NCBI RefSeq assembly: GCF_001194135.2
Contig: NC_068992.1
Coordinates: forward strand, 7,029,900 to 7,093,899
DNA length: 64,000 bases
Reading direction: 5' to 3'
Source: Octopus bimaculoides
Lineage: Eukaryota
Part shown: in pieces, positions 3,984-62,290 of the stretch
How the letters are laid out: each line of letters begins with the position of its first letter
How positions within the stretch are numbered: position 1 is the first letter of the stretch
The notes under the pieces: model-generated
What the model saw: only the letters and a program-made list of their open reading frames with translations
Told to the model about the DNA's origin: nothing
Databases searched by the model: none
Program-made: the position numbers and the translations under genes

Positions 3984-4034
3984 NNNNNNNNNNNNNNNNN
4001 NNNNNNNNNNNNNNNNNNNNNNNNNNNNNNNNNN
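3984..4034. other. Assembly gap (N run)
   Basis: Run of N. Confidence 1.
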
Positions 4035-7342: not shown

Positions 7343-7589
7343 NNNNNNNNNNNNNNNNNNNNNNNNNNNNNNNNNNNNNNNNNNNNNNNNNNNNNNNNNN
7401 NNNNNNNNNNNNNNNNNNNNNNNNNNNNNNNNNNNNNNNNNNNNNNNNNNNNNNNNNNNNNNNNNNNNNNNNNNNNNNNNNNNNNNNNNNNNNNNNNNNN
7501 NNNNNNNNNNNNNNNNNNNNNNNNNNNNNNNNNNNNNNNNNNNNNNNNNNNNNNNNNNNNNNNNNNNNNNNNNNNNNNNNNNNNNNNNN
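7343..7589. other. Assembly gap (N run)
   Basis: Run of N adjacent to an AT/AC microsatellite. Confidence 1.
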
Positions 7590-8062
7590 ATATATATACA
7601 CACACACACACACACTTATACACTATGTGTATGAGTGTATATGCAATTGTGTGTGCGTGTGCATATGTATTTAAATATAAATGATTTATTCAAAGATGAG
7701 TTGGGTCACTACTGGAATTTTCTATTTCCACTATAGTGAGTAAATCACCCCCCCCCCACACACACACACATTATCTATTGCTAAGTATTGATCAGAAGAA
7801 GTACTCAATACAGATGTAGTGTGCAATAGTTTATTTAGGCGTGCTGAGTGACTTGTTACTCTTGAATTACCAAAGCATGTGTCCAGTTTCACAGTGACCA
7901 ACACCTGACCTAATGCTGACTTTATCTGAGGAACCAGCTATACACATGCATGAACACATATATATATATACACACACATATGTGTATATATAGTTATCAC
8001 ACTTTAAATTTATCTATTTGTTTATGCATTTAATAATTTTTCGGTAAATATGCTAGATAAGT

Positions 8063-8430
8063 GGAGGCGCAATGGCCCAGTGGTTAGGGCAGTGGACTCG
8101 CAGTTTCAATTTCCAGACCGGGCGTTGTGAGTGTTTATTGAGTGAAAAACACCTAAAGCTCCACGAGGCTCCGGCAGGCGATGGTGGCGAACCCTGCTGT
8201 ATTCTTCCACCACAACTTTCTCTCACTCTTACTTCCTGTTTCTGTTGTGCCTGTAATTCAAAGGGTCAGCCTTGTCACACTGTGTCACGCTGATATCCCC
8301 GAGAACTACGTTAAGGGTACACATGTCTGTGGAGTGCTCAGCCACTTGCACGTTAATTTCACGAGCAGGCTGTTCCATTGATCGGATCAACTGGAACCCT
8401 CGACGTCGTAAGCGACAGAGTGCCAACAAC
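8063..8430 (+). mobile_element. Full-length young tRNA-derived SINE (family B) with 13-bp TSD
   Basis: tRNA-like head with A-box (tggcccagtgg), CpG-rich body and short (AAC) tail. Exact TSD atgctagataagt at 8050-8062 and 8431-8443. Confidence 0.9.
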
Positions 8431-10834
8431 ATGCTAGATAAGTAAATATACTATACATCTTTTGTTAGAAGATATGACTTATCATTGAATTAACAAGCAC
8501 CAAGTGATTCACTTTTTATGGATCATTAAGTCATATACAAGGTAAAGCCAAGAAAACTAATGTTGATGTGTGTTGACAAAATGGAATGTATTATTTTGTC
8601 GTGAGAAATTAATTTGACAAAAATATTCATTGTTTTGATTGAGCATTAATTTACTGTAGTCTTTAATTGATGTTAGTTAAGAATTATTAACCAATATGAG
8701 ATAAGCAGTTGGGTGGTTTGGCAAAATCCATTTTAAACATTAGAGAAATATCAAAACAATCATTTGCCACATTTAGTTTTGGCCATTTATGTTCTGAGTT
8801 AAAATTGTAAAATAACTACCAGTCCAGGATCAGGGCTGATATCATAGACTGACTCCAAGTTCAATAGGCTTAATCACCCGTAGATAGATACCTGTCATCA
8901 CCATAATTCACTTTATTTGCATAAATAAAATCGGAAGACAGAAAATCTTTGTAGATATTATCAAATACTGAGGAACAATTGATTCATTAAGATGATAAAG
9001 AAAATTTTTTTACATTATTTTTTTTTATTTTGGTTTTGGTGTCTCTGCTTTTGTTGTTTAGACCACAGGTTAGCTCTAATCAAGTAGATTTATGGCACAT
9101 ATGTAGTCAGTTGAATGACTATGTAATCAATAGATCCATTGTTCTAGATACACCACAAATTTGTCTAGAGGAGGAAGGACCATGCTGTGCATTCTAACAA
9201 CACAAAAATAGCTGCATTATCAATAATAATCTCATTAGCCCCAACAACCTTTGTGTTACTGAGAAACAACCTATGTTGCACTTCAACCAAGTCCTATTTG
9301 CCTGCTTCCACTCTGGTTGGGGGTTGCTGCCATCCAGTTTTCATTTTCATTTTTTTTTCTTTTCTTCTAAAATAAAGAACTCCAGACTATATTTTCTTTA
9401 TCATTCTCTGTTATAGTCATTAAGTATGGCTTGAAAAAGATTTCGATGCTGTTTCTAGCAAGTAGAGTAGTCTTGTAGTGACTCCTTCATTGGTTTATGT
9501 TCCCTGGTTGAATTTAGCATGTTAACGTTGATAATATTAACTCTAGATTAAATTACCAACTTGTTTGGTATCTTCGGTGATAATTTCTGGTTGGCAGGAA
9601 GTTAGATTTAGTCCATGTTCAATAACTGTCTTCTCAGGATTCAGCGTTGGTTACACATTATCACCACCACCACCACCACTACAAAATTTGGATTTCCAAA
9701 ATTCGTAATTATTTTGATAATATGAGATATTAGTATTATCATCATTATTGCATTATTTTTTTTTTTTGTTTGTTTTGTCTCAGATCATTACAGGAGACAA
9801 TAATTTTCTATTAAGACTTGTTCTTAATGTACATCGTCCATGATTGTAGGTTGACAGTTATGGAGCTGAAATAAATGTACAGCCACCATTGTTACATTTT
9901 GGTATTTTCTTATTTTGTGCAGTTTGGTTTAAATATGTTGGTGATTTTTGCTGTAGTTTAGCCTAGGTCTCTATGGATTAAGTAAGCCTATGTTCAAAGT
10001 ATTTCAAGCATGGCTATCCTATCCTATTTTCAGATAATATATATTTCAGGACAATATTATTCTGTATGTTTTACCTATTTTTTAAGATGTTGAAACACTT
10101 AAGAAGTTTAAGGAGATTTAGGTCACTATTTTCAGCAGGTCAGCTTCCATGAGGAGACTTCCTTATTGACTATGTAGGTGTGAGAAGAGTTAGGATGGTA
10201 GAAGAGCTGGATGTGATAATGCAGGGAGCATTGTTTTGCATTTGCTTCATGTCAACCAGATTGAGCAGACTTGTGATCAAAAGTGTTCTAACCATCACCA
10301 TCATGTCTTTGTATATCTAGCATTACAATGTAAAAATATATTTTCCTTCAAATATAAGATGCTAAGAGTGAATTGTATGAGATCTAGATATTATTTCTAG
10401 CAGATCAAACAACCACATAAAACAACTCCTTTGTTGACCAATGATGATGATAATGATAATAATGGTGTTGGTGATGAGGCTGATATCCTGACAGTCAAAA
10501 AGAACATGTCACATTGAACAAATTATTCTGAAAATATTAATAATTGAATAGTTAATTGTGGAAACCTCTGATTGGTCAAAGACTTAAATGTGTAGCAACT
10601 TTTTGTCACTGACAGAATGGATTCTGTGTAGAGGCTCTCTCATTGGCTGAAAATTACAAATTGCACATTTTCATATCTTTTGACCTGCATACGCTAGAAA
10701 TAGTAGCCAAATTTTCCTGAAATCAATACTTTGGCATCATATAAAAAGAAAGTACACGTTATATAGTGTAGTCCAGGACAGTCCCAGCTGCAATGCTTTT
10801 GTACATCTGTTCAATGAAAGTTACCAGAGGCTAA

Positions 10835-11917: not shown

Positions 11918-11939
11918 AGGGTTAGGGTTAGGGTTAGGG
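11918..11939 (+). repeat. Interstitial telomeric repeat AGGG(TTAGGG)3
   Basis: Exact agggttagggttagggttaggg. Confidence 0.9.
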
Positions 11940-12167
11940 TAGGTAAGTGAATTCACAAAATTTTGAACGGTAAATGGGAGTTAGGTATGGAGGGAAGGGA
12001 TTAAAAAGGGCAAATTGTGTGCAGGAAGGTAGGAGAACACATGAGGGAGAATGGAGGGGAAGTAGAGAAACAGTGGTGGTGGTGGTGGTGGTAGTGGTGA
12101 GCATAGGTAGGATGTGGGAGAGTGAGGGAGTCATGGACATGGGTTTTACTATCCTGGAAGGGTCTTC

Positions 12168-18902: not shown

Positions 18903-20241
<1,339 letters not shown>

Positions 20242-21354: not shown

Positions 21355-21715
21355 NNNNNNNNNNNNNNNNNNNNNNNNNNNNNNNNNNNNNNNNNNNNNN
21401 NNNNNNNNNNNNNNNNNNNNNNNNNNNNNNNNNNNNNNNNNNNNNNNNNNNNNNNNNNNNNNNNNNNNNNNNNNNNNNNNNNNNNNNNNNNNNNNNNNNN
21501 NNNNNNNNNNNNNNNNNNNNNNNNNNNNNNNNNNNNNNNNNNNNNNNNNNNNNNNNNNNNNNNNNNNNNNNNNNNNNNNNNNNNNNNNNNNNNNNNNNNN
21601 NNNNNNNNNNNNNNNNNNNNNNNNNNNNNNNNNNNNNNNNNNNNNNNNNNNNNNNNNNNNNNNNNNNNNNNNNNNNNNNNNNNNNNNNNNNNNNNNNNNN
21701 NNNNNNNNNNNNNNN
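21355..21715. other. Assembly gap (N run)
   Basis: Run of N next to (CT)n. Confidence 1.
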
Positions 21716-24673: not shown

Positions 24674-24808
24674 NNNNNNNNNNNNNNNNNNNNNNNNNNN
24701 NNNNNNNNNNNNNNNNNNNNNNNNNNNNNNNNNNNNNNNNNNNNNNNNNNNNNNNNNNNNNNNNNNNNNNNNNNNNNNNNNNNNNNNNNNNNNNNNNNNN
24801 NNNNNNNN
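24674..24808. other. Assembly gap (N run) after (CT)n tract
   Basis: Run of N. Confidence 1.
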
Positions 24809-27743: not shown

Positions 27744-27753
27744 NNNNNNNNNN
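27744..27753. other. Assembly gap (10 N) within (CT)n
   Basis: Run of N. Confidence 1.
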
Positions 27754-31960: not shown

Positions 31961-34090
31961 TATATAAAAAAAAATAGAAATCATTATATAAGTGTCAATT
32001 TATTTGCTATTATTAAAAAAATATATATTTCCTAAAGATTTTATCCATCACTTGTTAATGCAACATTTCCAGAATTTCTATTGCTGATGGCTTTAGAAAT
32101 GTTTAACACTGACTTTTCCATAAAATTGTCTTTATTATCCAGTTTTCATTTTATGGCCATTTTAATAGTACTCGTTGGGGTTGGATAAGTTTGTAAAGTT
32201 AGAAATTGGTTTATATAACCATATATAAGTAACCAACAAACCTTGTCTATAATATATATGGACCTGGTTAGAAAGTGAGTCAGGTATTTTATTTTCATAT
32301 ATCATTTCAACTGAGACAAGTTGAGTAAAATGATTTCAAATGACTTGCCATTGTCAAATTAATATAGGATTACACATAACACAAATAGAATTCAGAGATG
32401 CTAACAGTTCAGTTGACATAACCAATGGATGGTGAATGCAGGAAAAACATTCAACCACACACTTTTATGTCTGACTGATCCCAAACATTTAAGAAAATGT
32501 TAGCAAATTGTGATACTTGTTCTAGCTCTGCATTGTGGGTTCAAATCCAACTAAGGTCAACTTTTGCTTTCATCCTTCAATGGCCAATAAAATAAAATAT
32601 CAGAATTACAAGAAAACTCACCAACAAGCAATGTGTTATTTATGCTATATGCCTTAACTTCCTGAGTAATTAGATGTCAAGAATGTGTTTGTCTGTAGCC
32701 AACAAAATTTGTCTTGTATATATACCAAAAGAAAAAGGCAATGGTAAACATTTTTCTATCCTCTTTTCCTACAAAGATGTTATAGTATGCATATAACATT
32801 TCTCAAGGAAAATGTTTGTCAACTTGAGGATGCAAGGAAGAAAGGATGGCTTCATGTTCAAAATACCAAATAGCTATCTTTTGGCCTCAAATTTCAATTA
32901 ACAATTTAAATGAAACCAAATGCTTTCTTTGAATGTAAATCAAATAAAGTGATAGTCTGACTGAATATTATAGGAACAGGCTGAACTGGATGCTACAATT
33001 TCAGTGCAGGCATAGGAATGTGTCAACTTCAGCATTTGATCCTCAGAAGAGGAGAGGTTAGTAAAAAAAAAGGTTAACTTGCTATCTTCAATTTGATTTT
33101 CATGGTTATCTTCACCTATGATGACAAAATATTGGGTAATGACTAAAAGAATGTGACTTTAAATACAAGCAGTCAAAGTAAGGTTTCTCTGAGAGATCTC
33201 TGAAGTAACATTACTCAACAAAGTGCATAGCTTGAAAATCAAGAGTCTCTCCAGGTCAAGCTGCTATTTCAGTTAAGGGCTATAGTAGAAGACACTTGTC
33301 CAAGATAGTATGCAGTGGGACTGAACTCAAAACCCAATGGTTGTAAAGTGAGCTTCTTGACTTACACAGCTATGTCTGATAATTTTCTTTGTTTTTCTTT
33401 TTTTGCACTGTTTTTTATTAGTTTTTGGGTTTTTTTTTTTCTTTTACAACTAGATCAGCTCTGATTGCTCAGAGCTATGATAAAAGGTATTCCAACAATG
33501 GCTACCCCTGCATCTTCAGATATAAGTTAATATCAGATTATCAACCATATTTTTCTTATTAGATTTAAACAAGGCATGAATGCACATGCACACATGTGCT
33601 CATACACCCCCCCCCCCACACACACACATATAGATATGCAGTCCTCAATTTGCATCTATTTTTCAAATCTTGCATTGACTGGACACATAGTCTCTCCCAC
33701 ATAGTGTCCTGTCACTTGTTGCATTCAGGGCCCATGGACTCACTACCATCAAGCATCACATTTTGTTCACAAACATTACACAGTCTACACTTCTTTGCTC
33801 ACAGAGAGTGAATCATCTTGTTTTCAGCCTTTCCTACCCATTTTTTTTATCCAGTTGCTTTGCCATCCAAACTCACATAAATTCACTTCAAACTGATCAG
33901 CAATATTTTATGGAAGTTATGTATTAGTAAAAAGAAGGCATCAAGAAATCATTTTTTTTAAATCCTGTCATATTTTTAAGGAATAAATCCTAGATATTTT
34001 AGTACTTCTTATATTACCATCTCCCTGTTTCTGTCAGACAGTATTCTTTGTTTAAACTACAAAATTTTGCAAATGCCACAAGGTATTAAA

Positions 34091-34207
34091 TTTATTATTT
34101 TTCCTTCTTTTTCAGGTAAGTTTTCTCCATACTTCAAAACGTATATGGGTCCCGCTGAGAATGTAATACATACTACTACAATAACTTCACAAATATGAAA
34201 AGTAAGT
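34091..34207 (+). promoter_or_regulatory. Candidate recursive splice site (AG|GTAAGT) with 86-nt cryptic exon 34116-34201
   Basis: tttattatttttccttctttttcag|gtaagt at 34115/34116, 31-nt AG-free zone upstream, second GTAAGT at 34202. Confidence 0.55.
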
Positions 34208-34304
34208 CCAAGATAAAAAAAAAATTCTCTCATAAAAATTATCGTTTTGATTTGTGTTTTTTTTTTTTTTTGCTTTTTTTCATTATTTAAAAAATTTCTT
34301 ACCA

Positions 34305-34545
34305 GAGTGTTGAATCAGAGTGTAAACAAACCCACATTGGTTGTCAAGCGATGGTGAGGAGACAAAAGACACATACACACACACATACATGACAGGCTTC
34401 TTTCAGTTTCCATCTACCAAATTCATTCACAAGGCTTTGGTCAACCCAGTGCTATAGAAGACATTTGCCCAAAATACCAAACTGTGGTACTGAACCAAGA
34501 AACATGTAGCTGGGAAGCAAACTTCTTACCACACAGCCACACTTA
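34305..34545 (-). mobile_element. SINE family A copy
   Basis: ttggttgtcaagcgatggtg...ggcttctttcagtttccatctaccaaattcattcacaaggctttggtcaaccc...cttaccacacagccac. Confidence 0.85.
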
Positions 34546-37354
34546 TATATTATTTGCATATATGCATGCTTGTGTATGCACATGTGTATGCATGTGCATG
34601 AGTGTGTAAGGTAGAGAAGTTATTAGAGTGCTGGAAAAAATACTTTGTAGTATGTTTCGTCTCTTTGTACATTGAGTTCAAATCTCACCAAAGTCAACTT
34701 AATCTTTCATCCTTTTGGGGTGAGTAAAAAAGAACCATTCCAGTATGGTGGATTAGCAGAATTGTTAGAGCATTAGACAGAATGTCTTGCCATAGCTGTT
34801 CAGGCGCTGTACTTTCTGAGTTCAAATCCCAACCTGTTACTGAAAAGCAACAACATTTCTGCCACTAGCTGTGAGACATAGTATATGCAGCTTGAAAAAC
34901 CCCTGAAAACAGATTCTTTGATCAGTATAGAAGATCGACTACCACCACCACCACATAGTCATGTATATGTATACACCTATGTGTGATAGTGTGTGTGTAT
35001 TCACAAAAGATGATTTGCTTCATCTAGACTTCAACTTTCTTGTTTGCATGTATTCATTCAGGCTATAAAAAGATGACTGGATTGGTCAGGATTTAGATTA
35101 TGGTCACTGAACTTCTTTTCATTGATCAACTTCGATCAGCTGACAGTGATGAGAATGCTGGAGTGCCATGCATGATTTGAAAATATTATCTGACAAAAGT
35201 TGACCAAATAAGAAAGGTGGTGACAGAGTTCCAAACCTCAAACTATTCTATTCATCTCTTTGTTGCATGAACAAACACAGAATTGAGAAATTCAAAGTAA
35301 CAATGGCTTGAATCATCAGCTTTGAATAAATTAATAGAATCTACCATAGATATTTGAGTACTTTTCTCCCTGTTTGCACTCCCAGACAAGTATGTATATG
35401 TGTATGTCCACATGCACATATGTGTATAACAGTATGTTGTAGCAAGACACATAATGAAACTAACAATGCAAATCTTAATTCTCTAATCAAAGCATTTATT
35501 CACTGAGAGTGCTCTACAGCTAATTAAAAAATTAGTTTGGTCTATAATCACTGTCAATGCAAGATAAATGAATGGATAAAATTAATCTAAAAGTGTACTT
35601 ATGTGAAGATATATTTATATTTATCTTACGGTAATATTCTGTATCTAAATGTTTCTGGCATACAAGTTGAAATAGTATATACTGTAAACATGTAAATCAA
35701 GCATACAAACATCATCACTATCTTTCTAAAACCTGTGGTGTTTCACATAGTGTATGAATCAACCTACATTTTGGCTATAAATTTGGGTCTGAAAAATTCA
35801 ACTTGTATATTAAAAAATATAGTATTTATCCAGTGTAAAAGAGATAGGCTCCCCGGAGGCCTTGCTATGGACAGCAATTGGCCATTCAAAGTAGAATATA
35901 CTTGGATCAAAATGTTTAAGGGGAACAAAGTGAATGTAATCATATATACTCCCAAAAAATATATACCCACAAAAGAATATATACCTCCAAAAGAATATAT
36001 ACCCCCAATAGCTATATCGAGGTTGACCTGTGGCTAAACAACAACAACAATCTACATACTAAATCAAATGTAAAGATGGGCCATTCAGAGCTAGGTAACT
36101 TGGTCATAAACGAAGCACATTGCCAGTGACAGCAAGACAAACAAATTTCAAATTCTTTAACCATTTGTCTGGTACCCTATTAATTCACAGACAGCTATTT
36201 CTTCTTTAGTTTCTTTCTCTCACTCTTTCACTTTCTCTCTTTTTTTTTTCTTGCTTTTCCTAAAATATATAGCAAAGCCTGAATTATATTTCCCAAGTGA
36301 CGCTAATATAAACTTCACTTTAACAGATGAAATAGACTGTTTAGAAAATCTGAAATTTTATATTTTTACACTTCATCTGTTCATGGCCTGACTTGATCTA
36401 TCATTTGATCAATCATTTATAAATCACATATACAATGGAAACTTTAAAGCAAAAATAGAATAAAAGTATTTTATCTGTAATAGCAATATCATTTTTATTC
36501 ATATCTTTGTGTTGAGGCAGAATAATGAAACGAGATTTAGATAGATGTAACTCTTTCTTTTGTTCAATTGACAGTTGTTTAAACTGGTGGGGTCACTAGT
36601 AAAAAACGTGTTCATAGACAAAGCACGAAATATGTATATATATATATGTGTGTGTATATGTATATATGTATATACATATGTGTGTGTGTGTGTGTGTATA
36701 AAACGTGTGTATATATACACACATACATGTATATGTATGTATTCTCTTATATTATCATTTTACTAATTTCAAGAACTGGACTGAAGCTATGCAGGGACAC
36801 TATTATAAAGGGGTTTATTTGATTATATCAGCCTCAGTAATTTGACTAGTATATAATTCAGTCACCTTGTATGCTACAACAGCAAAGTTAACCTAGGTAT
36901 AAAAAAATGTAACTAATGCAAAACTAAATAAAAGGTATTTTTTGTTTAATAATCAGGTTCTGACATATATCACCAACACACACACACATATGCACACCTA
37001 CATGCACACACATGCATGTGCACATTCACACACACAAATAATGCATACTAACATGTACAACGGGATCTGCTATGATAGAAAACATTTGCTCCAAGTTGAT
37101 GGTGAAGCAAACTTCTTGACCTCATAACCATGCTTGCAGGTATATGAATCTAATAAACACATGCAGTCGTTTGGTTCCTCCAACCTCATACAAATAGGCT
37201 GCTAGTAGTGGTTTCTGTGGTGAGTAAGTCTTTTTATGAGGTGCCAGTCTTAAGCCCAACCTTCCTCTTTCTTTACCCTGGCTCAGAACAGGTTACAGCT
37301 AATACACACATACATTGATTCATATGTATATATATATCTATATATGTGTGTGTT

Positions 37355-37523: not shown

Positions 37524-38216
37524 CTAAGCAATTAGAGCAAGGTCATTAGCATAGAGAAGCTCCCAGGGGCATCCTGTCTTGAATTCCTCTGTTATTGCCT
37601 GGAGGACTATGATGAATAAGAGGGGGCTGAGGACTGATCCTTGGTGGACCCCTACCCCTACCAGGAATTCTTCACTATACTCGTTGCCAACCCTCACCTT
37701 ACTAACAGCATCCCTGTACATGACTTGTACAGCTTTTACCAACCACTCATCTATCCCTAGTTTCTTCATTGACCACCAGATAAGGGATTGGGGGACCCTG
37801 TCAAAGGCTTTCCCCATGTCAACGAAAGCCAGGTACAGACGTTTATCTTTGGCTAGGTATTTTTCTTGCAGCTGTCTTACCAGAAAAATAGCATCAGTGG
37901 TGCTTTCCCCTGGCACAAACCCAAACTGCATCTCATCTAAACTGACTCTTTCCCTAATTAGTTGGGCTATGACCCTCTCCATGACTTCCATTACCTGATC
38001 CAACAACTTGATACCTCTGTAATTATTTGTATCTAAAGCGTCACCTTTACCTTTGTAACAGTTGACTATGGTGCTGCTACTTTAGTCATTGGGTATGACT
38101 CCTTCATGTATCACCTGATACAGGTGACTAGACTATAGTTGATACCGCCAGATATTTTAAGCATCTCTGCGGTGATTCCTGATGGGCCTGGGGCTCTCCC
38201 TGTCTTCATATCCTTA
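37524..38216 (-). pseudogene. RTE-clade LINE reverse transcriptase fragment
   Basis: KTGRAPGPSGITAEMLK, YKGKGDALDTNNYRGIKLL, QFGFVPGESTTDAIF, AFVDMGKAFDRVP, GVHQGSVLSPLLF, LLYANDLALIA (YADD motif mutated to YAND, then stop). Confidence 0.95.
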
Positions 38217-44834: not shown

Positions 44835-45000
44835 CACAAGGGGCTTCTTTCAGTTTCTGTCTACCATATCCACTCACAAGGCTTTGGTTGACCTGAGGCT
44901 ATAGTAGAAGACACTTGGCCAATGTACCACACAGTGGGACTGAACCCAGAACCATGTGGTTGGGAAGCAAGCTTTTTACCATACAGCCACGCCTGCACCT
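44835..45000 (-). mobile_element. SINE family A 5' part
   Basis: gggcttctttcagtttctgtctacc...gtgggactgaacccagaaccatgtggttgggaagcaagc...cagccacgcctgcacc. Confidence 0.85.
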
Positions 45001-45926
45001 ATATATATATATGTATATGAGGTTTGATCAATAAGTATCCAGACTGTTGCCGTAGTAACAAAGCTAAAACACACGGTAAAGCCACTTGGCAAAGATTGAC
45101 CTTAAACTCTGCTGTGCAGAAATGAGCTAGAATGTTAAAAGTTAGTGCACATGCACAGCAAGGTTCAACGTCAAACTGTGCCAAATAGTTTTACTTTGCA
45201 TGCTTTAGCTTCGTTACTATGGCAACAGTCCGGATACTTATTGATCAGACCACACACATACACACACCCTCATATACATATATATACATACATATATATA
45301 TATATATATTGCTTAATGACAAGCAGTTGTTTGTCTAAAAGAACAGATGTTTTTACACACCCTTAATTACTTTTCCATATAAACTTCCTTCAAATAAAGC
45401 AACACTAGTTTCAAAGGGACGGTGGGGGACAAACACAAAGTCTCACATACATATATGCATATGTGTATGTATATGTATTTGAGAGGCTTCTTACTGTTTC
45501 TGTTTATCAAGCCCACTCACAAGGTTTTGGTCAACCTAAGATTATAGTAGAAGACACTTTACCCAAGGTACCATACAGAAACATAGGCAAGTGTAATGAA
45601 GTTTGGTTTGCAAAGACATGGTTCCAGATACAATTCCACTGCACAACATTTCTAGCCAATGGTTAACACGGCTTTGTTAGTGAAACTTTGCAAGCAGATA
45701 TAAGTATTGTGGCATATTGGAAGGGTTACATCTGTTGAGTGGGTAGCCTTACTCTGGTACCACTGTAACACTATAACTCTTAGTTTTCTTTGATGCTGAC
45801 ATTCTGTTGCCATCATTTATATAAGTCTGAAGATAATTTCCTTTTTCCAATCTGGGAGTTGGTGTAAAGAAATGTTATCAAAGCTGTTCTCCTTCTGCTG
45901 ACTAAGACATAAAACATAACGAAACA

Positions 45927-56714: not shown

Positions 56715-57105
56715 GGTGTAGGAGTGGCTGTATGGTAAGTAGCTTGCTTACCAACCACATGGTTCCGGGTTCAGTCCCACTGCGTGGCACCTTGGGCAAC
56801 TATTTTCCACTATAGCCTCAGGCCGACCAAAGCCTTGTGAGTGGATTTGGTAGACAGAAACTGAAAGAAGCCCGATGTATATATATATATATATATANNN
56901 NNNNNNNCCCCCCCCACCATCGCTTGACAACCAATGCTGGTGTGTTTACGTCCCCATAACTTAGCGGTTCAGCAAAAAGAGACCGATAGAATAAGTACCA
57001 GGCTTTTAAAAAATAAGTCCTGGGGTCGATTTGCTCGACTAAAGGCGGTGCTCCAGCATGGCTGCAGTCAAACGACTGAAACAAATAAAAGAGCAAAAGA
57101 GAGTA
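56715..57105 (+). mobile_element. Full-length young tRNA-derived SINE (family A)
   Basis: A-box tggctgtatggt, B-box ggttcagtccc, CORE-like ccttgggcaa segment, internal (AT)n, and tail ggcggtgctccagcatggctgcagtcaaacgactgaaac + A-rich repeat. Interrupted by a 10-N gap at 56898-56907. Confidence 0.9.
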
Positions 57106-61884: not shown

Positions 61885-62290
61885 CAAACATGGCTGCATG
61901 GTTGAGAAATTTCCTTCCTAATCACATGGTTTTGGGTTCAGTACCTGTGTGTGGAACTTTGGGCAAGTGCCTTCTACTATAACTCTGGACTGAACATAGC
62001 TTTAAGAGGAATTTGGTTTATAGAAACTGGAAGAAGCCTGTTGTGTATAAGTGTGTTTTAGTGTCTCCTCTTCTTGCCATTGCATAATGGTTGTACATGG
62101 GCATCACTACCATACAAACAGTGTCTTTTGTGTCCAGTTTTCTGTGGAATCATGTTTAGTTACAGGGAAATACTGCCTTGAGGGTTGGCAACAGGAAAGG
62201 CATCCTGCCATAGAAAATCAACCTCCACAAATTCCATTCAAACTTTGCAAGTATAGGAATGTGGAAATTAAAAGGATGAGGATGATGATG
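61885..62290 (+). mobile_element. SINE family A head followed by RTE-type tail
   Basis: tggctgcatggttgag...cacatggttttgggttcagtacc...ttgggcaagtgccttctactata; later ggcaacaggaaaggcatcctgccatagaaaa and (GAT)n. Confidence 0.65.

What the first reader, a model, noticed from the sequence alone, without database searches (positions are those of the whole stretch)
34091..34207. Textbook recursive (ratchet) splice site with downstream cryptic RS-exon
Seen: in non-repetitive DNA, a 22-nt T/C-rich tract ends in CAG and is immediately followed by a perfect GTAAGT donor, with a 31-nt AG-exclusion zone upstream. A second perfect GTAAGT lies 86 nt later, and the intervening segment has stops in all three frames. 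Established: AG|GTAAGT zero-length exons with an adjacent cryptic exon define recursive splicing of very long introns in Drosophila and vertebrate neural genes. Inference: the window lies in a >60-kb + strand intron that is removed stepwise; I know of no description of this in molluscs. Alternative: an ordinary 5' exon ending ATGAAAA|gt that supplies a start codon.
Basis: partly seen in the sequence, partly recalled or inferred. Interest (0 to 1): 0.7.

Follow-up and report, generated by a model that had tools for sequence, protein, structure and literature searches.

The report
Candidate recursive splice site, unproven
The sequence really contains a near-perfect "ratchet point" (an intron-end signal fused to an intron-start signal, with a second intron-start 86 bases later) of the kind used to remove very long introns in steps, but nothing available here shows that this DNA is transcribed, on which strand, or that the site is conserved, so it remains a good candidate rather than a discovery.

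Summary
TTTATTATTTTTCCTTCTTTTTCAG|GTAAGT lies at 34091-34121 (+), with 20/22 pyrimidines, TT at -5/-6 and a 31-nt AG-free zone. A second GTAAGT lies 86 nt downstream, and the 86-nt segment has stops in all three frames.

The 8-mer core AGGTAAGT occurs at chance frequency (2 found, 2.3 expected). The full motif is rare: about 0.0003-0.004 expected per 64-kb window, and about 0.0003 or less with the second donor. Scaled to an assumed genome of about 2.5 Gb, that still allows tens to over a hundred chance copies.

All sequence-testable features of fly and vertebrate recursive sites are met. The defining functional features could not be tested:
- sense-strand location in a long intron
- conservation
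- junction reads, saw-tooth coverage or lariats

No coding exon, host gene, orthologous sequence or organism identification could be obtained. Strand hints favouring + are weak.

My estimates are about 0.4 for a real recursive site, about 0.36 for a chance motif and about 0.17 for an ordinary non-coding or poison exon. If real, it is a new member of a known kind in an unreported phylum. Interest is modest.

The parts
34083..34113 (+). AG-exclusion zone (31 nt without AG) upstream of the acceptor
   Evidence: the last AG before the acceptor is at 34081-34082.
34091..34095 (+). Only YTNAY branch-point-like motif (TTTAT, A at 34094), 21 nt upstream of the acceptor G
   Evidence: Such motifs are common in AT-rich DNA, so this shows compatibility and is not evidence of use.
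34091..34112 (+). Polypyrimidine tract, 20/22 T or C, with TT at -5/-6
   Evidence: Only 8 of 3406 + strand AGs have a tract this pyrimidine-rich upstream.
34113..34115 (+). CAG acceptor (3' splice site) of the putative ratchet point
34116..34121 (+). GTAAGT donor immediately after the acceptor AG (ratchet-point 5' splice site). In the genomic context CAG|GTAAGT it is a 9/9 match to the U1 snRNA 5' end.
34116..34201 (+). Putative cryptic RS-exon: 86 nt, GC 0.33, stops in all three frames, length not a multiple of 3
34202..34207 (+). Second GTAAGT donor (AAA|GTAAGTCC), the putative RS-exon 5' splice site
   Evidence: Predicted U1 pairing is -5.6 kcal/mol, against -10.6 to -12.1 for the ratchet donor once it is joined to an exon ending in AG.

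Best explanation
I read this as a candidate intronic recursive splice site (ratchet point) on the + strand with a cryptic 86-nt RS-exon. The mechanism below is inferred from the fly and vertebrate models; none of it is shown here.

1. If the + strand is transcribed as part of a long intron, the acceptor (branch point near 34094, pyrimidine tract, CAG at 34113-34115) and the downstream donor at 34202 together define the 86-nt segment as an exon.
2. The upstream exon is spliced to 34116. This recreates a 5' splice site, (exon)|GTAAGT.
3. That recreated donor pairs better with U1 than the AAA|GTAAGT donor does, so it is used for the next step.
4. The 86-nt segment, which carries stop codons and would shift the frame, is removed together with the rest of the intron and leaves no trace in the mRNA.
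For: - All motif elements are present and near-optimal.
- TT at -5/-6 is present here and in 99.5% of fly ratchet points (bioRxiv 10.1101/006163).
- A downstream donor at exon-like distance, with exon content that is out of frame and full of stops, matches the description of cryptic RS-exons in PMC8605326.
- With a typical ...AG exon end, the recreated donor pairs with U1 at -10.6 to -12.1 kcal/mol, against -5.6 for the RS-exon donor. This fits the donor-competition model.
- The full motif is expected only about 0.0003-0.004 times per window, and 0.0003 or less with the second GTAAGT. It is the only such site among 164 AGGT on the + strand.
- No coding exon was detected within 34 kb upstream or 30 kb downstream. 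That is compatible with a very long intron.
- Weak strand hints favour +: T exceeds A by 3.8%, there are 72 poly-pyrimidine runs on + against 40 on -, and both Pfam-matched transposon relics are antisense.
- Ratchet-point motifs are enriched 4-20-fold on the sense strand of long introns in sea urchin, bee, beetle, mosquito and fly (PMC2773006). Use outside flies and vertebrates is therefore plausible.
Against: - There is no evidence of transcription, strand, host gene or conservation.
- The core 8-mer occurs at chance frequency.
- Assuming a genome of about 2.5 Gb, the chance rates scale to tens to about 150 copies of the strict motif.
- In large repeat-rich vertebrate genomes most such motifs show no sense-strand enrichment (ratio 1.0-1.5, PMC2773006). 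This window has a similarly large-genome character.
- The two donors have identical intronic hexamers, so the superiority of the ratchet donor depends on an unknown upstream exon.
- A 64-kb stretch without an exon fits intergenic DNA equally well.
- The G/C skew is slightly negative on +, opposite to what is seen on the sense strand in mammals (the comparison rests on general knowledge).
Confidence: 0.4

Rival explanations
1. Chance motif with no function. A T-rich tract, an AG and two GTAAGT hexamers happen to lie together in AT-rich, pyrimidine-tract-rich DNA that is intergenic, antisense or simply not used by the spliceosome.
For: - AGGTAAGT and GTAAGT occur at or below shuffled expectation.
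- The + strand is rich in pyrimidine runs (72 runs of at least 12 nt), which raises the local chance of a tract before any AG.
- The per-window rates, scaled to an assumed genome of about 2.5 Gb, give tens to about 150 chance sites.
- Background ratchet-motif density is 0.07-0.12 per 100 kb in every animal examined (PMC2773006).
- The features were chosen after looking at the sequence.
- No exon, RNA family or homologue ties the region to a gene.
Against: - The per-window expectation is low: 0.0003-0.004, and 0.0003 or less with the second donor.
- Every extra feature asked of a real site is also present: TT at -5/-6, the AG-free zone, a branch-point-like motif, and an exon-like spacing to a second donor.
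Confidence: 0.36
2. An ordinary exon that happens to carry the motif. One reading is that 34116-34201 is a real cassette, poison, 5'UTR or lncRNA exon that begins with GTAAGT. The other is that CAG|GTAAGT at 34115/34116 is simply the perfect donor of an upstream exon such as 34038-34115.
For: - 34116-34201 has a strong acceptor, a strong donor and a typical exon length.
- The splice-site scan also returns 34038-34115 as an acceptor-to-donor interval with an open frame.
- The genomic CAG|GTAAGT is a 9/9 match to U1.
- Exons with a donor at their 5' end that are normally included are reported as numerous in mammals (PMC6224609 abstract; PMC8605326).
Against: - 34116-34201 cannot be internal coding sequence, because it has stops in all frames.
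- Both intervals have intron-like GC (0.33 and 0.24).
- No protein homologue was found for ORFs around the site.
- No other exon was detectable in the window for it to join.
Confidence: 0.17
3. The motif belongs to an old or low-copy transposable element whose consensus carries these signals. It would then be inherited sequence, neither selected for nor used in splicing.
For: - The 675-bp unique segment is sandwiched between interspersed-repeat copies.
- Only 15% of the window is detectable as repeat by self-comparison, so older repeats would be missed.
Against: - The window holds no second copy.
- There are no terminal inverted or direct repeats of note around the segment.
- No protein or Rfam similarity was found.
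Confidence: 0.05
4. One reading: a short first exon ending ATGAAAA|GT that supplies a start codon.
For: An ATG lies at 34195, 7 nt before the donor.
Against: - Three ATGs occur in this 86-nt AT-rich segment, as expected by chance.
- No promoter evidence is available.
- This reading leaves the perfect acceptor-plus-donor junction 80 nt upstream unexplained.
Confidence: 0.02

Closest known systems
Drosophila intronic ratchet points ('zero-nucleotide exon' recursive splicing; Hatton 1998, Burnette 2005, Duff 2015, Joseph 2018, Pai 2018)
   Same: - A long pyrimidine tract, then CAG|GTAAGT.
- TT at -5/-6.
- A short downstream cryptic exon that ends in a second donor and is out of frame.
- No exon nearby.
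   Different: - Fly sites are defined by junction reads, saw-tooth coverage, lariats and strong conservation. None of these is available here.
- Fly cryptic RS-exons are about 50 nt (PMC8605326); here the segment is 86 nt.
- Here the second donor has the same perfect intronic hexamer as the ratchet donor.
Vertebrate recursive sites with RS-exons in long neural genes (Sibley 2015; Blazquez 2018)
   Same: - The RS-exon is defined by a downstream 5' splice site.
- Inclusion would introduce premature stop codons.
- The setting is a large, repeat-rich genome.
   Different: - Vertebrate sites were found from brain total RNA-seq in genes of known identity.
- In vertebrates the motif alone has little predictive value: the sense/antisense ratio is 1.0-1.5 (PMC2773006).
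Poison or cryptic exons (pseudoexons) in long introns
   Same: A short non-coding segment flanked by strong splice sites inside presumably intronic DNA.
   Different: A pseudoexon does not need a donor at its very first base. That juxtaposition is what sets this site apart.

Membership tests
Recursive splice site (ratchet point) | [quoted passage not shown] | tested here: met
   CAG|GTAAGT at 34113-34121.
Recursive splice site (ratchet point) | Prominent polypyrimidine tract with TT at -5/-6 (99.5% of fly ratchet points) | tested here: met
   20/22 pyrimidines; -6..-1 is TTTCAG. Criterion taken from bioRxiv 10.1101/006163.
Recursive splice site (ratchet point) | A downstream 5' splice site delimiting a short cryptic RS-exon that is out of frame or carries stop codons | tested here: met
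   GTAAGT at 34202; 86 nt; stops in all three frames; 86 mod 3 = 2. Criterion taken from PMC8605326.
Recursive splice site (ratchet point) | The recreated ratchet donor is stronger than the RS-exon donor | tested here: inconclusive
   The intronic hexamers are identical. With an exon ending in AG the ratchet donor pairs with U1 at -10.6 to -12.1 kcal/mol, against -5.6 for the RS-exon donor. With a poor exon end it reaches only -5.4. The upstream exon is unknown.
Recursive splice site (ratchet point) | Lies on the sense strand inside a very long intron | tested here: inconclusive
   No coding exon was detected anywhere in the 64 kb. The host gene and strand are unknown. Only weak composition and transposon-orientation hints favour +.
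Recursive splice site (ratchet point) | The motif is more conserved than the flanking intron in related species | not testable with these tools
   Attempts to retrieve related DNA failed. No animal genome collection is on hand.
Recursive splice site (ratchet point) | Junction reads from the upstream exon to the site, saw-tooth nascent RNA coverage, and lariats ending at the site | not testable with these tools
   No RNA-seq data are available.
Ordinary internal coding exon | An open reading frame through the exon, with protein homology | tested here: not met
   Stops in all three frames. No homologue was found for ORFs around the site.

The most novel reading that the evidence does not exclude
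The site is a working ratchet point in a mollusc. Recursive splicing of long introns would then occur in Lophotrochozoa as well as in Ecdysozoa and Deuterostomia, which argues that it is ancestral to bilaterians and that it helps process the very long genes of a large invertebrate genome.
Probability: 0.4. Interest if true: 0.45.

Novelty: new member of a known kind. Interest (0 to 1): 0.3.

Why it matters
If real, this would be the first recursive splice site reported in a mollusc. No paper in the held library links recursive splicing with molluscs, octopus or cephalopods. It would extend a mechanism documented experimentally in flies and vertebrates to a third major animal lineage.

A specialist would not be greatly surprised. 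The motif is already known to be enriched in long introns of sea urchin and several insects (PMC2773006). One unvalidated motif match adds little by itself. The useful consequence is a cheap, well-defined test: a genome-wide sense-versus-antisense motif count, plus a junction-read search in public RNA-seq data.

Tried and rejected
1. Exact look-up of the two ORFs nearest to or overlapping the site in public assemblies: not on record.
2. Protein-database search with 525 aa of concatenated ORFs from 32.9-36.0 kb, hoping to pull in contigs from related species: no hit.
3. Protein search with the transposon-like ORFs, to identify the organism or an annotated gene in the window. It returned only reverse-transcriptase relatives, mostly unnamed; the named ones are cnidarian, amphioxus and a contaminated bacterial bin. 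Best identity was 80%, and none is encoded by the window.
4. Protein search with 3778 aa from 69 non-repeat ORFs (GC at least 0.378, at least 38 aa), to find any coding exon and so the host gene and strand: no hit.
5. Splice-site-flanked open-frame scan for exons: 16 weak candidates, none convincing.
6. Two exact-pattern scans of metagenome contigs, one for the junction and one for the RS-exon interior: no match.
7. Rfam at gathering threshold on the whole window and at E of 1 or less around the site, plus a tRNA scan. This found only microsatellite-type mir-297/mir-3149 matches and a weak snoRNA match, all far below threshold.
8. Pfam did not confirm several ORFs that I read by eye as reverse-transcriptase tails or a Helitron N-terminus. 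Transposon orientation as a strand indicator therefore rests on two Pfam matches: RVT_1 above its cutoff, and a Tc3-type HTH below its curated cutoff.
9. The second relaxed motif hit, at 38216, is AG|GTACTG inside an antisense reverse-transcriptase relic. I rejected it.
10. The GC-rich block at 8.06-8.44 kb, considered as a possible exon or promoter, is a SINE-like insertion with target-site duplication.

Full report
**What is in the sequence.** On the + strand, 34091-34112 reads TTTATTATTTTTCCTTCTTTTT, which is 20 of 22 pyrimidines. It is followed by CAG (34113-34115) and then directly by GTAAGT (34116-34121). Positions -6 to -1 are TTTCAG. The nearest upstream AG is at 34081-34082, which leaves a 31-nt AG-free zone. 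A second GTAAGT lies at 34202-34207, 86 nt after the first, in the context AAA|GTAAGTCC. The 86-nt segment between them has GC 0.33, stops in all three frames and a length that is not a multiple of three. One branch-point-like YTNAY motif (TTTAT, A at 34094) lies 21 nt from the acceptor. The only caveats are that the tract contains two A, and that 'non-repetitive' can be checked only inside the window. There, 33640-34315 is single-copy, while interspersed-repeat copies occupy 33270-33378 and 34322-34561.

**Is it more than chance?** The 8-mer AGGTAAGT is not unusual: 2 matches against 2.29 expected from shuffles, the other being at 11941 next to a short TTAGGG run. GTAAGT is, if anything, slightly under-represented, at 28 against 36. 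The rarity comes from the combination.
- Only 12 of 7253 AG dinucleotides in the window have at least 20/22 pyrimidines upstream. That gives about 0.004 full motifs per window.
- First- and third-order Markov simulations give 0.0003-0.0013 per window, and 0.0003 or less when a GTAAGT is also required 30-200 nt downstream.
- It is the only site of its kind among 164 AGGT on each strand.

For one window this is unlikely by chance. The features were defined after seeing them, however. The genome size is my assumption; no tool established it. Scaled to about 2.5 Gb, the same rates give tens to about 150 chance ratchet motifs and a handful with the second donor. Published background densities, at a looser threshold, are 0.07-0.12 per 100 kb in all animals examined (PMC2773006).

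**Context.** I could not find a gene.
- A six-frame survey, a scan for open frames flanked by splice sites, and a protein-database search with 69 non-repeat ORFs (3778 aa) produced no coding exon on either strand.
- ORFs around the site have no homologues and are not on record in public assemblies.
- Rfam and tRNA scans found nothing relevant.
- The window consists of AT-rich DNA (about 33% GC) with microsatellites, interspersed-repeat copies, six assembly gaps and transposon relics.
- Two relics have a Pfam match, both on the - strand: a reverse transcriptase at 37.5-38.1 kb and a Tc1/mariner-type HTH at 19.7-20.15 kb. The HTH match is below its curated cutoff.
- Other reverse-transcriptase-like or Helitron-like ORFs that I read by eye were not confirmed by Pfam.
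- The + strand has 3.8% more T than A and 72 poly-pyrimidine runs against 40 on the - strand, but a slightly negative G/C skew.

These are weak hints that + could be the sense strand of a transcription unit, and no more than that. A 64-kb stretch without exons fits a very long intron and an intergenic desert equally well. No tool confirmed the organism. The reverse-transcriptase relatives are mostly unnamed, and the named ones come from diverse marine animals, at 80% identity at best.

[quoted passage not shown] TT at -5/-6 occurs in 196 of 197 of them, and the junction is strongly conserved (bioRxiv 10.1101/006163). They are followed by a short cryptic RS-exon of about 50 nt. [quoted passage not shown] It is recognised first and then removed because the recreated ratchet donor outcompetes the RS-exon donor (PMC8605326). 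The vertebrate model is the same, with inclusion of the RS-exon introducing premature stop codons (PMC5126111).

The present site meets every sequence criterion. On donor competition, the two donors share the same intronic hexamer. The RS-exon donor has A at -1 and pairs with the U1 5' end at -5.6 kcal/mol. The ratchet donor would reach -10.6 to -12.1 kcal/mol once joined to an exon ending in AG, but only -5.4 with a poor exon end. This criterion therefore depends on the unknown upstream exon.

The defining functional criteria could not be tested with the tools available:
- a sense-strand location in a long intron
- conservation of the motif
- junction reads, saw-tooth coverage and lariats

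**Weighing the explanations.** The answer depends mostly on how common real recursive sites are in this genome, and that is unknown.
- Suppose the genome behaves like the invertebrates analysed by Shepard et al., with 4-20-fold sense-strand enrichment (sea urchin 8-fold). A motif this strong in an exon-free 64-kb stretch is then more likely real than not.
- Suppose it behaves like large vertebrate genomes, with a ratio of 1.0-1.5. Chance copies then rival real ones.

Allowing also for post-hoc selection, my estimates are:

| Explanation | Probability |
|---|---|
| Working recursive site | about 0.40 |
| Non-functional chance motif | about 0.36 |
| Ordinary non-coding or poison exon (34116-34201), or the perfect donor of an upstream exon such as 34038-34115 | about 0.17 |
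| Signals inherited from an unrecognised transposon | about 0.05 |

**Novelty and interest.** No paper in the held library links recursive splicing to molluscs, octopus or cephalopods. The single co-occurrence is in a reference list. If real, the site would be a new member of a known kind in a phylum where it has not been reported. Given the known motif enrichment in other invertebrates, this would be a modest surprise, and a single unvalidated motif cannot carry the claim.

Noticed in passing
window 8063-8430 (flanks 8050-8062 and 8431-8443): A 368-bp GC-rich (about 0.5) SINE-like insertion with a tRNA-like head (GGAGGCGCAATGGCCCAGTGGTTAGGG...). It is flanked by a perfect 13-bp target-site duplication, ATGCTAGATAAGT, and is single-copy in the window, so it looks like a recent insertion. 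ARAGORN does not call it as a tRNA.
   Followed up: partly
window 11922-11948: A short interstitial telomere-type repeat, (TTAGGG)3, followed directly by TAGGTAAGT. This is the only other AGGTAAGT in the window. It has no pyrimidine tract (6/22 Y).
   Followed up: partly
window 37527-38081 (-) and 19736-20152 (-): Two transposon relics on the - strand: a reverse-transcriptase ORF (Pfam RVT_1, E = 3e-20) and a Tc1/mariner-type HTH (E = 2e-4, below the curated cutoff). The named relatives of the reverse transcriptase are from diverse marine invertebrates (Hydractinia, Branchiostoma) and one is labelled as a bacterial MAG protein, probably host contamination.
   Followed up: partly
whole window, + strand: Strand asymmetry: T exceeds A by 3.8%, poly-pyrimidine runs of at least 12 nt number 72 on + against 40 on -, and T runs of at least 12 are 31 against 3. 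The G/C skew is slightly negative. This could reflect transcription on + or just microsatellite content; I did not resolve which.
   Followed up: no
window 3984-4034, 7343-7589, 21355-21715, 24674-24808, 27744-27753, 56898-56907: Six runs of N (10-361 nt), which are assembly gaps, several of them next to microsatellites. None is near the finding.
   Followed up: no
window 34322-34561 and at least 10 other places (e.g. 44842-45018, 56724-56949, 61891-62066): Copies of one interspersed repeat of about 200 nt with a (CA)n-rich end, at 70-79% identity, in both orientations with no clear bias (5-6 same, 5 opposite). One copy starts 115 nt after the second donor.
   Followed up: partly
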